From contig JADGIF010000539.1 in assembly GCA_018985225.1 (NCBI GenBank), forward strand, positions 1 through 6,882: DNA of 6,882 nucleotides. Direction: 5' to 3'. The position numbers and the translations under genes were made by a program. The DNA is from Amoeboradix gromovi X-113. Its lineage: Eukaryota > Fungi > Sanchytriomycota. This document shows, one piece after another, positions 1 through 6,707 of this stretch; the stretch's first letter is position 1; the number at the start of each line of letters is the position of its first letter. The notes below the pieces were generated by a model that was given only the letters and a program-made list of their open reading frames with translations, was not told the DNA's origin and made no database searches.

Positions 1-68
1 TCCTGCGTAGAATCCATATTTGCTGTCACGAAATAGCTCTCTTGTGTGTTAAATGGGTTCTGATTGGT
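1..68. repeat. Direct repeat copy 1 (runs off the left edge): 5' end and upstream region of a second copy of the transposase gene
   Basis: 1-68 is identical to 2811-2878 (tcctgcgtag...ctgattggt). It includes a minus-strand ATG at 17-15 (MDSTQ...) and a CCAAT box at 63-67. Confidence 0.95.
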
Positions 69-166
69 CATTAGATGTATAATTTGACAAAATGTAGCTA
101 TTTACTGTGATTGGATAAAAAATTAATTAAATGGAGTAAATCAAATCAAGTAGTTTTTAAAACAAA
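61..166. promoter_or_regulatory. Putative compact divergent promoter with two CCAAT boxes
   Basis: ATTGG at 63-67 and 110-114 lies between a leftward ATG (17) and a rightward aacaaaATG (167). ATTGG also occurs upstream of other genes (2873-2877, 3419-3423, 5099-5103). Function is inferred. Confidence 0.4.
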
Positions 167-956
167 ATGTCAGATCGTCATATTATTTCTCAATACCTTG
201 ACATAGTAAAAGAATCAAAGAGATCTTAATGATGAATATGTAGGTGAGCTTGAAGAATACATTAATAATATAAGTGGAGGAAATATGATAAATATTGTTG
301 CTAAAGGAGCTCGACCTTATTATCTAAGAAGTGAAGAACAGGAAACAACACAACATGAATTTGCTTTAAAAAAAGTTTATAATGAAGCTAGAAGTAAAGC
401 AAAAGTCATAGACGTAATGGATACAACTGAAAAGCTATTTATTCGATCACAAACAAACAGTCTGAGAATACTGAAGCTAGAAACAGAGTCGATGAAAAGA
501 GATGAAGAGATAAAACTTCTTAAAAAGAGACACATTTATGCAGATTTGATGATCTTGACCAAAAGAATTGCTCTTGGATCTGTTGACCATTCGTTGATTG
601 TAACAAAAAGTGAAAGGAAAGAGGAAATAACAGAATCAAATCGTGAGCTTGGTAAATTACATCAATACTTAAAAGAAAAACAAAATTTTACACTCTCAGA
701 TGAAAGATTACGCGAGCTTTTACAAATGAAAGAGATGAGAAATGACGAGGCTCATATAAATTGTGAAAGCATTGAAAAGATAGAAGAATACTGTAGATCA
801 AATGATATTCCTTTATCTAATCATGAAAAACAAGAGATGAAAACACTTATTTCATACAATGAAAAAATTACAATAGATGAGTGGACATTTTACACTCGTC
901 CTTCTAAAAAGCAGATTAATCACATAAACAAATACTTTGAAAACAACCCATTGTAG
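167..956 (+). CDS. Coiled-coil protein with a C-terminal HEPN-like RNxxAH motif; open 285-956, probable true start at 167 behind a frameshift
   Basis: 223-aa ORF with charged helical segments and LLQMKEMRNDEAH (RNDEAH at 738-755). The frame stays open upstream to about 210. Removing one A from the run at 208-211 joins it to ATG 167 (MSDRHIISQYLDIVKNQRDLNDEY...). AATAAA at 961-966 follows the stop. Confidence 0.65.
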
Positions 957-980: not shown

Positions 981-1144
981 CTATATATTTCTTCGTTTAT
1001 TACCAAACTAATTACGAGCACGTTGAACATCCCATCCAAGATCAAACGCTAAGTTTTCTATGACTTGCTTATTTGGATTGGGGTTCTCACTAAATACGTT
1101 TTTCAGCTTTTGGACTTCCTCAGCATTAGGTATTCTACGTTTTT
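981..1144 (-). other. Homeodomain-coding segment (C-terminus of the transposase)
   Basis: Reads (KK)RRIPNAEEVQKLKNVFSENPNPNKQVIENLAFDLGWDVQRARN*FGNKRRNI*. This gives R5, L16, F20, N23, P26, L34, A35, L38, F49, N51 and R53 at exact homeodomain spacing, with TAG at the W48 position. Confidence 0.88.
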
Positions 1145-2827
1145 AGGCTCAGTATCAATAACAAGCTCTTCTTCAGATTTAATTTGGGTGACTATAGTAT
1201 TGTTAGTTGGTCTAGGATATAGTACGTCTTTATAAGCATCAGGAATGAATGGACGTACTTTTGTGTAAAGACCTTCCTGTTTAATCATTTTGATTCCAGG
1301 AATAGGTAATTGTTCAGGATTAAATGCATAAGATGACAATGGTATCTTTAATAAATCAATCAACACGAAATCATCATCTACGGATTTACGCACTTTCACT
1401 TTACCTTTCCAATCTTTGTTAAACCAGAAGCACTGGTATTTAGAAATACCTTTAACATCATTGAACATATCGTCTAAAGGAGTTCGATAATCCTTGAATT
1501 TTGTACTTGGAAAGATAAAAGATTGATTAGAACTGGATGACTCGTTAATCGATGTATGAATATGATCCATTGTAAAACAGTCTCTTGTTTGAAATGTTTT
1601 CTTAATTACACCAAAATGACCATCAAGGCCAAATTTTGTATGTCCTCGTACCATAAACGTCAACTGAATATCATCTGAATGTCCTTGCATGACAAACCAA
1701 CATAGCGTCTTGATCATGCAATTGTTTTTGTTTTGACCTGTACAATTATCACAATGAAAGATAATCTGTTTTCGTTTTTCAGGTCTTAGTTTATAATAAT
1801 AATGGACTATCATTGACACAACATTATTGCTCCCTTTCTTACCTTGGCTTTCATCATAAATGTAATTCATTTTTATATTCTTCTTTTCATCGAGTAGACC
1901 AAAAATACAAACATTCAAAAGTGACATAAAATAAAATGAAGCAGGCTGGTTCGGTAAATGAGGTAACCATAGATTCTGTGCATAATCAAAGGAGAGATGT
2001 GTCACATCTTCCTGTCTTGAGTCAATATGATATTCTTCTCTAGCGTACCTTGCTTCCTTCAAATGATTTGCAAGGGTTTCATTTAATTCTGTCAACATTT
2101 TTACATCAGTCGGTTAGCAATCTTCATTTTAAGTTGTATACATTCATTACAAACATCAGATTTTGGCGCCTGAATTTTAATAGGTAATGCATCAAAAAGG
2201 CGTTTAAATGTTGAATAACTAATAACGTTTTCGTTTTCTGATTTATAACGCTCGTATATTGCTTGGAATGTATAATGGGATGGAATAATTGTATCTGTAT
2301 CTCGTATTTGACCATTATTTCTCCATTGGCCTGGACGTTGCTCACCTTCTCGATTCGCAAAAGATGTAATCCAATTACTTGTATCATCTTTCAGCATATT
2401 TGACAATGCATGCGGAGGTACTCTATTCGTGTTACCTTGTAATTGGAGCTGTAATCCATTTTGTTTTAATTCATCAACCCATCTTTTTACTGTTTGATGA
2501 CTTATACAAAAAAAGTCTCGTAAATGCATGAACACATACATTTTGAAAAGGATAGGATATATACTGAAGCGCTTCGCGTCAGTTTGGATTACTTTTGTTT
2601 TTTCGTCTACAACAATAAACAACTGTTTTCATACAAATCTGTTTTTGTTCTTTTGACCAAGAAAGGTAATTGTCTCTAAATTCCGTTAACGTGTTTTGCT
2701 TTTCATATAAACATCACTTTTGACAACATTCTAGCAAAGTCGATTCATTGACCCATTCTTCTACGACTTCTGTTTGCTCGTTTTCAAAATCTGAATGGTC
2801 GCTAAGCACGTCCTGCGTAGAATCCAT
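981..2827 (-). pseudogene. Disrupted Sola(1)-like DDD transposase with a C-terminal homeodomain (about 615 aa reconstructed)
   Basis: Catalytic motifs LSFDYAQNL, FHCDNCTGQNKN and FMVRGHTKFGLDGHFG; upstream PKSDVCNEC...HLKEAR metal-binding motif; N-terminal CCQKxC and NVCVHAFTRLFCIS. Lesions: TGA 2716-2714, TGA 2581-2579, +1 base in A7 at 2508-2514, -1 base near 2111-2116, -1 base in T5 at 1140-1144, TAG 1010-1008. Repair gives 1848 nt = 616 codons. The superfamily call is from recalled motifs. Confidence 0.85.
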
Positions 2828-2878
2828 ATTTGCTGTCACGAAATAGCTCTCTTGTGTGTTAAATGGGTTCTGATTGGT
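2811..2878. repeat. Direct repeat copy 2 (transposase start and upstream region)
   Basis: 68/68 identical to 1-68. Similarity is lost a few bases beyond the CCAAT box. Confidence 0.95.
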
Positions 2879-3220
2879 GATTGAACATCCAATCGATCCT
2901 GTTTTGAAAATTAAATTATGTAATGTAAATTTATTCACCGGCATCGCTGTTTCTGTTGCTATATTGATACCTAGGCTCTTTATTGGCAGCGTTTAGAAAC
3001 AAAGAATTTTGTGTTGTAATACAGACCCTAGGAACTTTATACACTTTGTTGCAATCGATATGTTACAAATTAAGTTTATTTTTGAAATAACATCCCTACG
3101 TATAATATATAAAGTATAATCATATTTGCTTGCAACCATCTAATCACTATACCTGGTGATTTAATTTGGAGCATATAAAAAGTCCCAAAAAACAACCAGA
3201 TAAATAAAAGAATAGCATAT

Positions 3221-3429
3221 GGGACAAACACTACAATAATTAGATATAATTCAAATTTTCAAATTTTAATTTTCTCATCTTGCTAAATCAGAATTTTATA
3301 TAGAGTTCCAAAATGATAGTCATTAAGCTCTAGCATCAATATTCATCGAGATGTCGCATGTTAAAGTTTTTTATTGAAATACACTACAATAATCAGACAA
3401 ATTTCAAGTTATAAACTGATTGGACCAAA
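3221..3429 (+). repeat. Transposon end-like repeat, copy A (about 210 bp, starts GGGAC)
   Basis: Aligns in direct orientation to 4689-4894 at roughly 80% by eye. Carries the subterminal motif twice (ctacaataattagat at 3231-3245; ctacaataatcagac at 3384-3398). Confidence 0.85.
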
Positions 3430-3537
3430 TACTTTATTTGTTTTGTATCGTCTTATAATCACATTTTGTGAAAAAGAAAGATAAAAATGATTTCACTGTG
3501 TTTGTTTGAAATATTTTTTTATTTTACTATTGAAACA

Positions 3538-3867
3538 ATGTTTAAATTTCTGATGGATTTTTTAATCCAGATTGGAATAAGAGATGTACCTGTGCCTTTT
3601 GGAGTGCGTAAGCAAATAAGGCAAGTAAAGCTTGTATCTTTAATTACAAGGTATAAATCCAGACCATATTGTGAGGCCATTTATGGAACTACTCGGACTA
3701 GAGAAATAAAAGATACGAGTTTGTGTAGAAAGTATGTCAAAAGGTTGAAGGTGTTAAGATCAAAAGCTGAGAAGTATAATTTTAAAAGTTCCTTTGACAG
3801 GCGGATACTTTTTGAGTTTCTTGAATTTGGGGAGACCAACCTTTCAAAATATGGCAGATTAAGCTAG
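3538..3867 (+). CDS. Small basic hypothetical protein (109 aa from gaaacaATG 3538; ORF open from 3487)
   Basis: Uninterrupted K/R-rich ORF just downstream of repeat copy A. No recognisable domain. The 3487-3537 extension is T-rich and looks like UTR. Confidence 0.5.
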   Translation: MFKFLMDFLIQIGIRDVPVPFGVRKQIRQVKLVSLITRYKSRPYCEAIYGTTRTREIKDTSLCRKYVKRLKVLRSKAEKYNFKSSFDRRILFEFLEFGETNLSKYGRLS

Positions 3868-3884
3868 TAACAAATATTTACTTA

Positions 3885-4514
3885 TTAATTTACCGGCTCA
3901 ATTCTTATTGGTGTAATACCACATGCTATTAATTTGTTATCAGTGTCTCTCTTCAGTGCATCACCCAATGGTTTAAATACTAAATCAAATGTTTGCACTT
4001 TATATTTCAATTTAGTGTAGAATAAATCAGGTATAATTAGTTCTGCAAAGTTTTCCTGCGCTAATTCTTCTGTCAAGTCTTCAGATTCATTAGATTCACT
4101 TAGCTCACTTTCTTGGAAGCTTTCGACGATCCATCTACAACAATCTATATAAGAAGAAGCGGTTATTCTTGCACGGTTTAAGTCTTCAAACTCCCTATAT
4201 TCTTGTTCAGCCCTTGAATTTCTTAAATTAACGAAGCGAACCACTGGTTCATTTACGCTAAAATACCATGAATATAATTTGACCATCGATAAAGCATATT
4301 CACTTTGTGTATCAGAGCAAAGTACATCCTTTAACAATCCAGAGAGCAATGTCACGGAATCTAACTCAGATTTGTTTCTTTCTATTAATATTGCTATTTG
4401 TAATGCATTCGCTCTGTTTTTAATATGAATAATGTAAAGAAGAACTGCTGCAGTGATTGCACCAACAACAGCTTAACTCCAATTTACACCCGTAAAAATA
4501 TCTTTATCCTCCAT
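3885..4514 (-). pseudogene. Hypothetical protein with an N-terminal transmembrane helix (209 codons) and one premature TAA
   Basis: The 156-aa ORF extends in frame to ATG 4514: MEDKDIFTGVNWS*AVVGAITAAVLLYIIHIKNRANALQIAILIERNKSELDSVTLLSG..., with a single TAA at 4475-4473. Confidence 0.7.
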
Positions 4515-4688: not shown

Positions 4689-4894
4689 GGGACACGCTAC
4701 AATAACCAGATAGAATTCAAATTTCCAAATTTTAATTTTTTGATTTTTCCAAATCAGTATTTTGCATAGAGTTCAAAAATGATAGTCACTAAGCTGTAGC
4801 ATCAATATTTGTCGAGATATAACTCTTTAAAGTTTTTAATGAAATACACTATAAAAACTAGACAAAATTTCAAATTACACTCGATTTGTCCAAA
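4689..4894 (+). repeat. Transposon end-like repeat, copy B (starts GGGAC)
   Basis: Direct-orientation homologue of 3221-3429. Motif copies are ctacaataaccagat and ctataaaaactagac (4849-4863). Confidence 0.85.
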
Positions 4895-5079
4895 AAGAGA
4901 TCATTGAAAAAATTATCTCAAATTCAACACTTCCTCAAATAATTCTACCAAAACATCTTCAACTTCTTGAGTGTTTGTTGACTGCATGTGGTGAATATGA
5001 GACGCACTCTATGATTTCTAGACTAGGGTGAAAATAAAGTTATTGAAAAAACCGCTTTCAAGCCAATATTGGGTTTACA

Positions 5080-5141
5080 CTGTAAAAACGAGACTAGGAT
5101 TGGTTTCACTCAAAATACTCTGTAAAACCGAGACTAGGATT
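5080..5141 (+). repeat. Two 22-bp subterminal direct repeats with a 40-bp period
   Basis: ctgtaaaaacgagactaggatt (5080-5101) and ctgtaaaaccgagactaggatt (5120-5141) match at 21/22 and resemble the TIR core ctrtgatttctagactagg. Confidence 0.85.
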
Positions 5142-5173
5142 TTCAAAAAGTATCTTTTTTCTCAAACATTGTA

Positions 5174-6278
5174 ATGTCCAAAGTACGTCCATTTCTAACC
5201 AAATTTGAACTTTTTGACGACATAAACAGCATCAAATTAACTAAACCGGATAGAGTTTACTTGCAGAACCACTGGTCAGATTTAGATGAATTTATCAGAA
5301 AAATGACCATAAAATTAAAAGACACAAATACCTATATTGCCAAAACAGAAAGACATATAATGTCAGGTGTCATTTATTTATCCGTTATATGTGGTATTAA
5401 TGACTATTCTAAGATCAAACACGTCATAGAAATATTGGCTAAATCTTGCAGAAAAGAGAAGTTAAATAGATCAAGCAGAGACGAAATTTGCCATATATTA
5501 GAGCATTACTTAGAAAATGCTTTATCTAATAGAATGAACAATCTCCATTTACAAGTAAACGTGGACGAATTTGATAAATTTATCAAAGGATCTGGTGGAA
5601 TAGACAATAAACTATACGATGAATTGAGAAAGGTTGGCATATGGCGTGCTTCTGTTGACTTACATGCGAAGAAACTGAATTTATATGGTAGCTTATCAGA
5701 AACAGAATTTAAAAAGAAGTGTATCGATCTTATTCCTGAAAAATACGTATCTTATTCTTGCAAGAGAATGCCTAAAAATATAAAAGACGAAATAGAACAT
5801 GCATTGGATTCAGAAGTTATTCGATCTTCTAACTCTGATTGCAAGCATGCTATTTATGATGAGATTTCAGACATCGCTATGATACCAATCCCAAAAAGTG
5901 TGAACCATTCTAATGTTTTTCGAATTTGTCAATTTGATGTGCCTCGTCCAGTTTCCAATAATAAAGCTGTCGTGTTAAAATCGGGTAAATCAAGTGGGAT
6001 TACTGAAGGATACTGTGAAAGTGATAGTACTGTAGATTTTAGTGGATATAAAGATCTAACGAGTGTCCGAGGATAGTGGAAGTTTGTATGTTTTTAAAAG
6101 CGTTGATGGTTATTATCCTCTTGCACTACATCGTACATCTGATGACGAGATGAATAGTTATGGATGTGACTTTATCAGTTCTTTTAAGCGTCTTTTACAA
6201 AAGGCAAAACGAGAAATTGACCATTTCTATCCCTGCTTGCACCCAAAATGCAATTATTCTCATATAAAATCACCGTAA
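5174..6278 (+). pseudogene. Trypsin/chymotrypsin-fold serine-protease-like gene with an unknown N-terminal region, frameshifted at GDSGS (about 368 aa reconstructed)
   Basis: SDIAMI (Asp motif, 5870), VLKSGKSSGITEG (KxGxx[T/S]GxTxG motif, 5978-6010). The first ORF ends ...SVRG and the next frame continues DSGSLYVF...PLALH; restoring 2 nt at about 6073 gives RGDSGS. No clear catalytic-His motif at normal spacing. Confidence 0.7.
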
Positions 6279-6386
6279 GTAAATCTATTTTAATAATTAA
6301 AAATAACAGAAATCCTCGTGTTCGGTTATTAGTAAGACTATTTTAAATTCGCTCATTAATGATAACAAATATATGAAGGATGTAAT

Positions 6387-6573
6387 TCAATCTGCTATCT
6401 TTCGTTAATGAAAGATGGAAAACTACCTTTTTAGTATTTGCAATTGAACCAAAAAGAATCAAATTTTATTTACAGAGAAGATCATGGTAAGAAAGGTGGT
6501 GAACAATGTAGTGAGTCATTTAATAGATTACATTTTCCTATTGCCATCTGATCAAAGACGCCATTTGATTTTG
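6387..6573 (+). pseudogene. Fragment of a paralogous Sola-like transposase
   Basis: 6456-6573, with one frameshift near 6500, reads ESNFIYREDHGKKGG/NNVVSHLIDYIFLLPSDQRRHLIL. The window's transposase reads KMNYIYDESQGKKGSNNVVSMIVHYYYKLRPEKRKQIIF (17/39 identical, ungapped). Weaker upstream pieces are SICYLSLMK and YLFSICN. Confidence 0.8.
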
Positions 6574-6707
6574 ACTTCAAATCGATGTTTATCAATAACT
6601 TTATTTTCACCCTAGTCTAGAAATCACAGAGTGCGTCCCATTAGGTTGTCTATTTTTTAGAGGGTGTTGTCATTTCTAACATGCTTATTAATTAGGATAA
6701 AGACAAT

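What the first reader, a model, noticed from the sequence alone, without database searches (positions are those of the whole stretch)
981..2098. Sola-like DDD transposase fused to a true C-terminal homeodomain hidden behind a frameshift
Seen: adding one base to the T5 run at 1140-1144 extends the transposase from ...IDTEPK into KRRIPNAEEVQKLKNVFSENPNPNKQVIENLAFDLGWDVQRARN(W)FGNKRRNI, with the homeodomain hallmarks at correct non-TALE spacing. Established: helix 3 WFGNKR (G50) matches that of PBX/Exd-class homeodomains, and transposases usually carry N-terminal HTH or zinc-finger DNA-binding domains. I am not aware of a canonical homeobox appended C-terminal to a Sola-type core, but could not search. 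Inference: it is a captured homeobox used for end recognition, targeting or autoregulation, and would be a route for homeobox mobilisation.
Basis: partly seen in the sequence, partly recalled or inferred. Interest (0 to 1): 0.85.

Follow-up and report, generated by a model that had tools for sequence, protein, structure and literature searches.

The report
Jumping-gene enzyme carrying a homeodomain
The window holds a broken copy of a Sola1-type transposon enzyme from the fungus Amoeboradix gromovi. Intact relatives of this enzyme end in a genuine homeodomain, a pairing I found no report of, so a classic developmental DNA-binding module can travel on mobile DNA.

Summary
On the minus strand, the DUF7869 transposase core (2098-1106) continues in the -1 frame into a homeodomain remnant (1142-984). 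The 44-residue piece before the TAG at Trp48 already passes Pfam's Homeodomain cut-off.

The fusion is native. A paralogue on contig C556 is one intact 686-aa ORF with core, disordered linker and a complete homeodomain ending the protein. Three other paralogues keep the junction in frame. The window copy has a 1-nt deletion (AAGAAA to AAAAA) and at least five further lesions, so it is a pseudogene.

The homeodomain evolves under purifying selection (dN/dS 0.14-0.19; core about 0.1). Core motifs match Sola1, not Sola2 or Sola3.

Homeodomain-bearing relatives occur in five other lineages from environmental assemblies. Two of these lineages have 36-40-nt terminal inverted repeats and near-identical copies, so they are real transposons.

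Sister subfamilies in the same genome lack the homeodomain. It is therefore an accessory DNA-binding module, probably for targeting or regulation. That function is inferred, not shown.

The resemblance to PBX is superficial. The termini of the A. gromovi copies were not found.

It is a new variant of a known kind.

The parts
984..1142 (-). Homeodomain-coding remnant, in the -1 frame relative to the core. KRRIPN...QRARN spans 1142-1011, TAG replaces Trp48 at 1010-1008, FGNKRRNI spans 1007-984, and two stops follow at 983-978.
   Evidence: PF00046 E 6.1e-6, 26.4 bits for the first 44 aa. (own-genome HMM hit C811:993-1142, 30 bits, 1 TAG). Aligned with intact paralogues.
1140..1144 (.). T5 run (A5 on the coding strand). 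It has lost one base relative to the paralogues' AAGAAA, which breaks the core-to-homeodomain reading frame.
   Evidence: The source run's contig shows the same run length.
1106..2098 (-). Open 331-aa piece holding the Sola1/DUF7869 RNase H-like catalytic core. The motifs SFDYAQN, HCDNCTGQNKN and GHTKFGLD (the DDD triad) are intact.
   Evidence: PF25273 E 1.7e-23. (Asp positions invariant or nearly so). (motif match to Sola1-1_AP). (dN/dS about 0.1 against paralogues).
2104..2628 (-). Frame-shifted piece encoding the N-terminal helix-turn-helix region and the CDxC motif. It ends in a stop where paralogues read on.
   Evidence: (weak HTH_23/HTH_32 hits). for the intact paralogue.
2717..2881 (-). 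N-terminal piece with the clade-wide NPFNTQESYF motif and CCQK. It is cut by a stop at 2716-2714.
2811..2882 (.). 72-nt stretch repeated at 1-72 (99% identical). It marks a second, near-identical copy of the element's start at the contig edge, and is probably a 2810-bp tandem duplication.

Best explanation
Window 984-2881 (minus strand) is a dead copy of a single-gene Sola1-type DNA transposon of Amoeboradix gromovi.

The family's transposase is built in four parts:
- a disordered N-terminus with an NPFxTQ motif;
- a helix-turn-helix DNA-binding region;
- a DDD RNase H-like catalytic core (Pfam DUF7869);
- a disordered linker of about 25-40 residues followed by a canonical 60-residue homeodomain that ends the protein.

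Shown here: the fusion is native, it is kept under purifying selection, and it is shared by several lineages, two of which are bounded by terminal inverted repeats.

Inferred: the N-terminal region and core do the cutting and pasting, as in homeodomain-less sister elements. The tethered homeodomain is an accessory sequence-specific DNA-binding module. It either steers the transposase to particular DNA (target-site or chromatin tethering) or regulates the element.

The window copy lost function through a 1-nt deletion at the junction, a TAG at Trp48 and several upstream lesions.
For: Native fusion:
- C556 carries one 686-aa ORF with PF25273 (1.8e-23) and PF00046 (9e-10, residues 632-686).
- The junction is in frame in C1105, C908 and C426.
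- This protein is EukProt EP00835_Amoeboradix_gromovi_P000800.

Selection:
- Window lineage against C556 lineage gives homeodomain dN/dS 0.14-0.19 at dS about 1.2, and core dN/dS 0.09-0.11.

Structure:
- The AlphaFold model has mean pLDDT 84.8. The core is confident, residues 608-632 are disordered, and three helices at 639-685 have pLDDT 92-95.
- Foldseek finds TnsB, Mos1, IstA and retroviral integrases.

Sola1 assignment:
- The motifs FD..., SFY(F/Y), E(G/S)xGK(K/R)GSN, DNCxGQN(K/R)N and RGHT(K/Q) match Sola1-1_AP in Majorek et al. 2014, supplement file 5. They do not match Sola2 or Sola3.

Spread:
- P0001, P0002, P0012, P0045 and L078-L080 carry the same architecture.
- All six transposon homeodomains share Trp at the usual Leu40 position, which is absent from the seven host homeodomains.

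Mobility:
- There are at least 7 copies in 10.5 Mb, most of them decayed, in different flanks.
- L078 and L079 are 96% alike and homology stops at their 36-40-nt terminal inverted repeats.
- L076 has 38-nt terminal inverted repeats matching at 37 of 38 positions.
- Two P0002-type copies in one sample have different 3' flanks.

Accessory role:
- Intact sister subfamilies in the same genome stop right after the core (...RYIPEEFHTFYN*) and are more numerous.
Against: - No terminal inverted repeats or target-site duplications could be found for any A. gromovi copy, or for the P0001 and P0002 lineages. Homology stops 13-35 nt after the stop codon.
- Only one intact copy exists in the genome, and its N-terminal 35 residues differ from the other copies.
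- No RNA run holds the gene, so expression is unknown.
- No DNA motif that a homeodomain might bind is enriched at the element ends.
- The function of the homeodomain rests on inference only.
- In the tree the homeodomain needs either one gain with about three losses, or two gains.
Confidence: 0.72

Rival explanations
1. The homeodomain is the element's end-recognition domain, or a necessary part of it. It would bind subterminal sites and be required for synapsis and excision, as the C-terminal cysteine-rich domain of piggyBac binds repeats in its ends.
For: The homeodomain is under purifying selection as strong as that on the core. It hangs on a flexible linker that could reach subterminal sites. 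Residue 50, a specificity position, differs between lineages whose ends also differ. The piggyBac precedent is from my own knowledge.
Against: Sister subfamilies with the same N-terminal HTH region but no homeodomain are intact and more numerous in the same genome. The domain seems to have been lost about three times in the clade without extinction of those lines. No TAAT-type motif is enriched at the defined ends.
Confidence: 0.2
2. The homeodomain-bearing genes are not mobile any more. They would be a domesticated transposase-derived homeodomain protein (a host transcription or chromatin factor), and the decayed copies would be old duplicates.
For: No ends were found around the A. gromovi, P0001 or P0002 genes. 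There is one intact copy per genome or sample. Purifying selection is strong. The window locus was duplicated as a 2.8-kb segment rather than transposed.
Against: At least 7 dispersed copies have unrelated flanks, and most are dead. There is no synteny between lineages beyond the ORF. The catalytic Asp triad is kept in all of them. Relatives with the same architecture have clean terminal inverted repeats and 96-99.8% identical copies in different samples. Two diverged copies with different flanks occur in one metagenome.
Confidence: 0.12
3. The apparent fusion is an artefact. It could be a chance open frame, an assembly chimera joining a transposase to a host homeobox gene, or contaminant DNA.
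For: The genome was assembled from amplified single-cell DNA and then decontaminated (PMC8371127). The window copy itself is out of frame.
Against: The same junction appears in four A. gromovi contigs at 73-93% nucleotide identity, and in independent assemblies from ENA, Logan, NCBI and GTDB genomes. Pfam scores are above the cut-off. dN/dS is well below 1.
Confidence: 0.01

Closest known systems
Sola1 group of the Sola superfamily of eukaryotic cut-and-paste DNA transposons (Bao, Jurka and Kapitonov 2009, recalled from memory; RNase H-like class E.10 of Majorek et al. 2014, PMC3985635)
   Same: It shares the catalytic-core motifs and their order with Sola1-1_AP, the DDD triad, a single transposase gene, and terminal inverted repeats in the L076 and L078 relatives.
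   Different: It carries a canonical homeodomain at the C-terminus. I found no report of one for any Sola element. A 4-bp target-site duplication could not be confirmed. Among fungi, Sola had been reported essentially only in Rhizophagus (PMC5751038). Here it is abundant in a sanchytrid.
piggyBac transposase C-terminal cysteine-rich domain (own knowledge)
   Same: It is an extra DNA-binding module at the very C-terminus of an RNase H-like transposase, behind the catalytic core.
   Different: The piggyBac domain is a zinc-binding fold, is essential, and binds repeats in the transposon ends. The module here is a homeodomain that sister elements do without, and its DNA target is unknown.
Targeting modules of integrases, such as the chromodomain of chromoviral (Ty3/gypsy) integrases or the Ty5 targeting domain (own knowledge)
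   Same: It is a C-terminal add-on that is dispensable for catalysis and present in only part of a family. This is the pattern expected of a tethering or targeting module.
   Different: Those modules read chromatin marks or bind host proteins. A homeodomain reads DNA sequence. No integration-site data exist here.
'Homeodomain-like' helix-turn-helix domains of Tc1/mariner and pogo transposases, and the paired domain derived from them (own knowledge)
   Same: These are three-helix DNA-binding folds in transposases. The N-terminal region of this protein gives weak hits to such families (HTH_23, HTH_32).
   Different: Those domains are N-terminal, bind the ends, and do not match the true Homeodomain family. 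The domain here matches PF00046 above the cut-off, with the W48, F49, N51 and R53 hallmarks.
PBX/Extradenticle (TALE-class) homeodomains
   Same: Helix 3 reads WFGNKR in A. gromovi, as it does in PBX. PBX1 and Exd appear among the solved-structure matches at E about 1e-4.
   Different: There is no three-residue TALE insertion. Better matches are non-TALE domains such as DUX4, HESX1, PDF2 and LMX1A. G50 is not conserved in the other transposon lineages.

Membership tests
Sola1 transposases (DUF7869, PF25273) | Pfam DUF7869 profile match above the gathering score | tested here: met
   The window core scores 83.7 bits against a cut-off of 26. The C556 protein scores 83.6 bits. L078 scores 89.9 bits.
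Sola1 transposases (DUF7869, PF25273) | Catalytic-core motifs of the Sola1 reference, as opposed to Sola2 or Sola3 | tested here: met
   I compared motifs by eye with Sola1-1_AP, Sola2-1_HM and Sola3-1_HM as printed in Majorek et al. 2014, supplement file 5. Only Sola1 shares DESEGKRGSN, DNCGGQNRN and RGHTQ. No formal alignment was run, because the reference exists only as typed text.
Sola1 transposases (DUF7869, PF25273) | DDD triad on an RNase H-like fold | tested here: met
   D336, D415 and D457 are at least 90% conserved over 150 relatives and invariant among homeodomain-bearing members. Foldseek hits are DDE transposases and integrases. The spatial clustering of the three Asp residues was not measured.
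Sola1 transposases (DUF7869, PF25273) | Terminal inverted repeats flanking the gene | tested here: inconclusive
   Met in the relatives L078 and L079 (36-40 nt) and L076 (38 nt, 37 of 38 matching). Not found for the window copy or any A. gromovi, P0001 or P0002 copy.
Sola1 transposases (DUF7869, PF25273) | 4-bp target-site duplication (recalled from Bao et al. 2009) | tested here: inconclusive
   The flanks of L076, L078 and L079 show no clear duplication. The exact outer ends are uncertain.
Homeodomain (PF00046) | Profile match above the gathering score | tested here: met
   The window piece scores 26.4 bits and C556 scores 38.7 bits against a cut-off of 22.9. L078 scores 42.7 bits.
Homeodomain (PF00046) | Hallmark residues L16, F20, W48, F49, N51 and R53 at 60-residue spacing | tested here: met
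   All are present in C556 and C1105. In the window copy W48 is a TAG stop. In C908 F49 is L.
Homeodomain (PF00046) | Three-helix fold | tested here: met
   The model has helices 639-651, 657-667 and 671-685 at pLDDT 92-95. No separate fold search of the domain alone was run.
Homeodomain (PF00046) | Sequence-specific DNA binding | not testable with these tools
   This needs gel shift, SELEX or DAP-seq.
TALE / PBX class homeodomains | Three-residue insertion between helices 1 and 2 | tested here: not met
   Alignments to PBX1 need a 3-residue gap in the query (query 10-61 against chain 5-59). The Pfam match is to the 57-column typical profile without an insertion. The Homeobox_KN score of 21.9 is below its cut-off of 24.

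The most novel reading that the evidence does not exclude
Homeodomain-bearing Sola1 transposons move between domains of life, so a eukaryote-type homeodomain has been carried into bacterial genomes on a transposon.

Evidence that leaves this open:
- One homeodomain-bearing gene (P0012) lies 350 nt from a bacterial-type operon. Its PhpK-family radical SAM protein is about 50% identical to Desulfarcum and Thiomargarita proteins, and it is followed by an NRPS C-T-TE module.
- A roughly 90% identical relative of P0012, bounded by terminal inverted repeats, is interrupted inside the homeodomain-coding part by an IS4-type bacterial insertion sequence with a 9-bp duplication.
- Three near-identical copies sit in bacterial genome bins.

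A companion reading is that the homeodomain steers integration.
Probability: 0.2. Interest if true: 0.85.

Novelty: new variant of a known kind. Interest (0 to 1): 0.62.

Why it matters
Transposases are known to pick up DNA-binding modules such as THAP, BED, Myb, WRKY and paired-like helix-turn-helix domains. Some host transcription-factor domains are thought to descend from them.

A true homeobox inside an active-looking, TIR-bounded DNA transposon is a concrete vehicle by which homeodomains can be copied, dispersed, fused to host genes or moved between genomes. I found no description of such an element.

It also offers a compact natural system, about 2.2 kb with one ORF, for asking whether a tethered sequence-specific domain redirects integration. 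That question matters for engineering targeted transposases.

For fungal genomics, Sola1 elements were previously seen in fungi essentially only in Rhizophagus. Here they are a major repeat family of a sanchytrid, and 4 of the 11 homeodomain matches above the cut-off in this genome are transposon-borne. Counts of homeobox genes in such genomes need that correction.

Tried and rejected
- **Programmed -1 frameshifting at the A-run.** Rejected. The site is U AAA AAC, not a full slippery heptamer. The paralogues have the fusion in frame with one more base. The same copy also carries a TAG at Trp48 and other lesions.
- **Mini-introns as a cause of the frame changes.** Earlier notes report 19-21-nt introns in this genome. 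Rejected, because the paralogue is colinear without gaps and the shifts are 1-2 nt.
- **Terminal inverted repeats around the window copy, C556, L016, L017 and L074.** None were convincing.
- **An apparent rule about flanking repeat ends.** The copies seemed always to be flanked upstream by a 'right end' and downstream by a 'left end' of the abundant GGGAC/TAAAAACTAGACTA repeats. On reflection this is trivial. Any neighbouring element with terminal inverted repeats presents an outer end to the gene. A 38-nt inverted match between the C426 5' flank and the C908 3' flank belongs to that abundant repeat (at least 384 copies), not to the element.
- **A conserved second gene downstream.** Convergent ORFs follow the stop codon in the window, L016 and L017, but they share no similarity.
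- **Synteny between lineages.** None beyond the ORF.
- **A host donor homeobox.** The closest, on C376, is only 36% identical.
- **A word-based database search with the homeodomain region alone.** It found nothing.
- **TAATTA sites at element ends.** No enrichment.
- **Reads.** Only one DNA run holds the gene, it is kept as contigs, and there is no RNA run. Expression and an independent check of the homopolymer were therefore not possible.
- **The Bao et al. 2009 paper.** It is not held, so statements about the Sola target-site duplication come from memory.
Full report
**1. What the sequence shows**

The window is a whole 6,882-bp contig (C811) of a 10.5-Mb, 1,319-contig assembly with 32% G+C. 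On the minus strand the pieces read as follows:

| Piece | Coordinates | Note |
|---|---|---|
| N-terminal piece with NPFNTQESYF and CCQK | 2881-2717 | stopped at 2716-2714 |
| Frame-shifted piece with weak helix-turn-helix hits | 2628-2104 | |
| Open 331-aa piece | 2098-1106 | PF25273 DUF7869, E 1.7e-23 |
| Homeodomain remnant, -1 frame | 1142-984 | KRRIPNAEEVQKLKNVFSENPNPNKQVIENLAFDLGWDVQRARN, TAG, FGNKRRNI, two stops |

The 44 residues before the TAG alone score PF00046 at 26.4 bits (cut-off 22.9, E 6.1e-6).

It has two frame-0 stops, three frameshifts and the TAG.

**2. The fusion is native**

A DNA search of the same genome found paralogues at 73-75% nucleotide identity to the window. These paralogues are 84-93% identical to each other.

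- **C556** holds one uninterrupted 686-aa ORF. It runs from the N-terminus through the core into ...NLKKRRITNADEIRKLTSVFSINPNPDKQVLETLAVDLGWDIQRVSFWFGNKRKRTK and then stops. Pfam finds DUF7869 (1.8e-23) and Homeodomain (9e-10, residues 632-686).
- **C1105** (5'-truncated) and **C908** keep core and homeodomain in one frame.
- **C426** keeps the junction in frame but is cut 16 residues into the domain.

At the junction the paralogues read CTTAAGAAACGTAGA and the window reads CCTAAAAACGTAGA. The window has lost one base of the A-run. I rejected programmed frameshifting for that reason and because of the other lesions.

An exact look-up shows that the 686-aa protein is EukProt EP00835_Amoeboradix_gromovi_P000800, which carries no functional name. 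This fixes the organism. The assembly size also agrees with the published 10.5 Mb (PMC8371127), and earlier scan notes had suggested the same species.

**3. The homeodomain is functional sequence, not a fossil passenger**

I computed Nei-Gojobori estimates between the window lineage and the C556 lineage.

| Region | dN/dS | Note |
|---|---|---|
| 51 homeodomain codons | 0.14-0.19 | dS about 1.2 |
| Catalytic core | 0.09-0.11 | |
| Homeodomain, C556 against decaying C908 | about 0.9 | |

The AlphaFold model of the C556 protein used 150 relatives as its alignment and has mean pLDDT 84.8. The body (residues 64-607) is confident. Residues 608-632 form a disordered linker. Three helices at 639-685 have pLDDT 92-95. 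Foldseek against the PDB returns TnsB, Mos1, IstA and retroviral integrases. The body is therefore a helix-turn-helix region plus an RNase H-like transposase.

**4. Which transposase**

DUF7869 appears in no paper in the library. The supplement of Majorek et al. 2014 prints the RNase H cores of Sola1-1_AP, Sola2-1_HM and Sola3-1_HM.

| Source | Core motifs |
|---|---|
| Sola1-1_AP | FD..., SFYY, DESEGKRGSNE, YSDNCGGQNRN, ERGHTQS |
| This family | SFDYAQN, SFYF, NEGQGKKGSNN, HCDNCTGQNKN, VRGHTKF |

Sola2 and Sola3 look different. 'Sola-like' is therefore right, and the group is Sola1. The three Asp residues (336, 415 and 457 of the C556 protein) are at least 90% conserved in 150 relatives.

**5. 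Which homeodomain**

By sequence the best solved relatives are DUX4 HD1 (2e-6), HESX1, PDF2, LMX1A and LHX4. PBX1 and Exd follow at about 1e-4, and only with a three-residue gap. It is a typical 60-residue domain of no assignable class.

A. gromovi has about seven host homeobox loci. The transposon domain is 25-36% identical to them, and no donor stands out.

All six transposon homeodomains have Trp where homeodomains normally have Leu40 (...L-G-W-D......L-A-W-D......L-Q-W-E......L-E-W-S......L-N-W-N......M-N-W-T...). The six are A. gromovi, P0001, P0002, P0045, P0012 and L078. None of the host domains has this Trp. Residue 50 is G, T or N depending on the lineage, so the PBX-like WFGNKR is not a family trait.

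**6. Distribution**

- The 90%-clustered protein collection holds two full-length relatives with both Pfam domains: P0001 (55% identical) and P0002 (50%). Relatives at 38% identity or below lack the homeodomain.
- A search of 1.84 billion representatives gave 5,063 DUF7869-type hits. Among the best 150, only P0012 and the fragment P0045 add the homeodomain.
- A scan of prokaryotic genome bins added L078, L079 and L080. Each has a 672-aa ORF, with DUF7869 at 2e-25 and Homeodomain at 4.9e-11.
- Within A. gromovi there are at least 30 Sola1 loci. Seven belong to the homeodomain subfamily. The other subfamilies include intact genes on C367 and C915 and stop right after the core.

In trees built without the homeodomain columns:
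- A. gromovi, P0001 and P0002 form a clade (support 100).
- That clade is sister to the homeodomain-less A. gromovi subfamilies.
- P0012 and L078 group with the homeodomain-less P0014.

This needs either one gain with about three losses, or two gains. The shared Trp40 favours one gain. I did not run an AU test.

**7. Are these real transposons?**

For A. gromovi I could not find the ends. Homology among copies stops 13-35 nt after the stop codon and 100-210 nt upstream of the NPF motif. The neighbours are unrelated repeats.

In other lineages the evidence is clear.
- L078 and L079 come from different samples and are 96% alike. Their homology stops at imperfect 36-40-nt inverted repeats (L078 72-112 and 2251-2297) that enclose a 2.2-kb single-gene element.
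- L076 has 38-nt inverted repeats matching at 37 of 38 positions.
- Two P0002-type copies that are 93.7% alike lie in one metagenome with different 3' flanks.
- No synteny links the lineages.

I therefore read the family as mobile. The homeodomain is encoded in the last 200 nt or so of the element.

**8. How it probably works**

Shown: the architecture, the selection on it, and the presence of terminal inverted repeats in relatives.

Inferred: catalysis and end binding work as in the homeodomain-less sisters, which share the N-terminal region. The homeodomain is therefore an accessory DNA-binding module on a flexible tether. Because it has been lost repeatedly while those lines went on multiplying, I favour target or chromatin tethering, or regulation, over essential end recognition. 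That preference is weak. No candidate binding site was found at the ends, and there are no expression data.

**9. Novelty**

Four searches of 8.4 million papers found no report of a homeodomain in a Sola or DUF7869 transposase. No database relative carrying both domains has a name. This scan's notes hold no earlier homeodomain-transposase note.

Domain accretion by transposases is a known theme, so I class this as a new variant of a known kind.

**10. An open lead**

P0012 lies on a 9-kb contig beside a PhpK-type radical SAM gene and an NRPS module. The closest named relatives of the radical SAM gene are bacterial. Its roughly 90% identical relative L076 is interrupted in the homeodomain-coding part by an IS4-type element with a 9-bp duplication.

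Homeodomain-less Sola1 genes occur in closed or isolate bacterial genomes. In the tree they form a separate clade.

Whether homeodomain-bearing elements really live in bacteria is unresolved.

Noticed in passing
window 4997-6641: An element with 54-nt terminal inverted repeats (94% complementary) that begin TGAGACGCACTC. It has subterminal repeats of CTGTAAAAACGAGACTAGG and an ORF of 300 aa plus 71 aa split by a frameshift (5174-6278). At 6446-6538 it holds a fragment of a different, homeodomain-less Sola1 transposase (...LIDYIFLLPSDQRRHLIL). Other readers of this scan noted it as a cargo-carrying element.
   Followed up: partly
whole genome; in the window at 4852, 5083 and 6721; also window 3228-3374 and 4694-4840: The motif TAAAAACNAGACTA occurs 859 times in 10.5 Mb, against 0 for the reversed control. 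It lies in the GGGAC-type ends of very abundant repeats that often sit 50-250 nt from contig ends. Homeodomain-less Sola1 genes (C426:5270-9838, C367, C915) lie inside such ends, so these repeats are probably Sola1 ends and their non-autonomous derivatives.
   Followed up: partly
window 1-72 and 2811-2882: A 72-nt direct repeat (99%) lies 2,810 bp apart. The source run's contig spans 39-2878 with overlapping ends. This points to a tandem duplication of element plus spacer, or possibly a circular form.
   Followed up: partly
window 285-956 (+): A 223-aa ORF converges on the transposase and ends 25 nt from its stop. It has no Pfam hit and contains RNDEAH, an Rx4H pattern. Another reader of this scan proposed a HEPN-like RNase. 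It is not repeated next to other copies.
   Followed up: no
L074:766-6956 and L076:66-3620: A homeodomain-bearing Sola1 gene sits next to bacterial-type genes (a PhpK-family radical SAM gene and an NRPS C-T-TE module). In a roughly 90% identical relative, an IS4-type element (DUF4372 plus DDE_Tnp_1, 9-bp duplication ACCACAATC) is inserted in the homeodomain-coding part.
   Followed up: partly
L083-L093, L100, L104 (prokaryotic genomes): Homeodomain-less Sola1/DUF7869 transposase genes occur in bacterial chromosomes. A 7.85-Mb uncultured Desulfobacterium chromosome has at least 6 copies, and they are also found in Desulfocicer vacuolatum DSM 3385, Thiomargarita nelsonii and a Poribacteria genome. 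All but the Poribacteria copy form one clade of their own.
   Followed up: partly
L002:96-737: A 213-aa ORF about 660 nt upstream of the intact C556 gene matches the C-terminal half of a protein kinase domain (PF00069, 4.2e-10). It is possibly a truncated gene.
   Followed up: no
window 3487-3867 (+) and 3885-4355 (-): Two ORFs of 126 and 156 aa lie between the GGGAC-type repeats. Neither has a Pfam hit.
   Followed up: no
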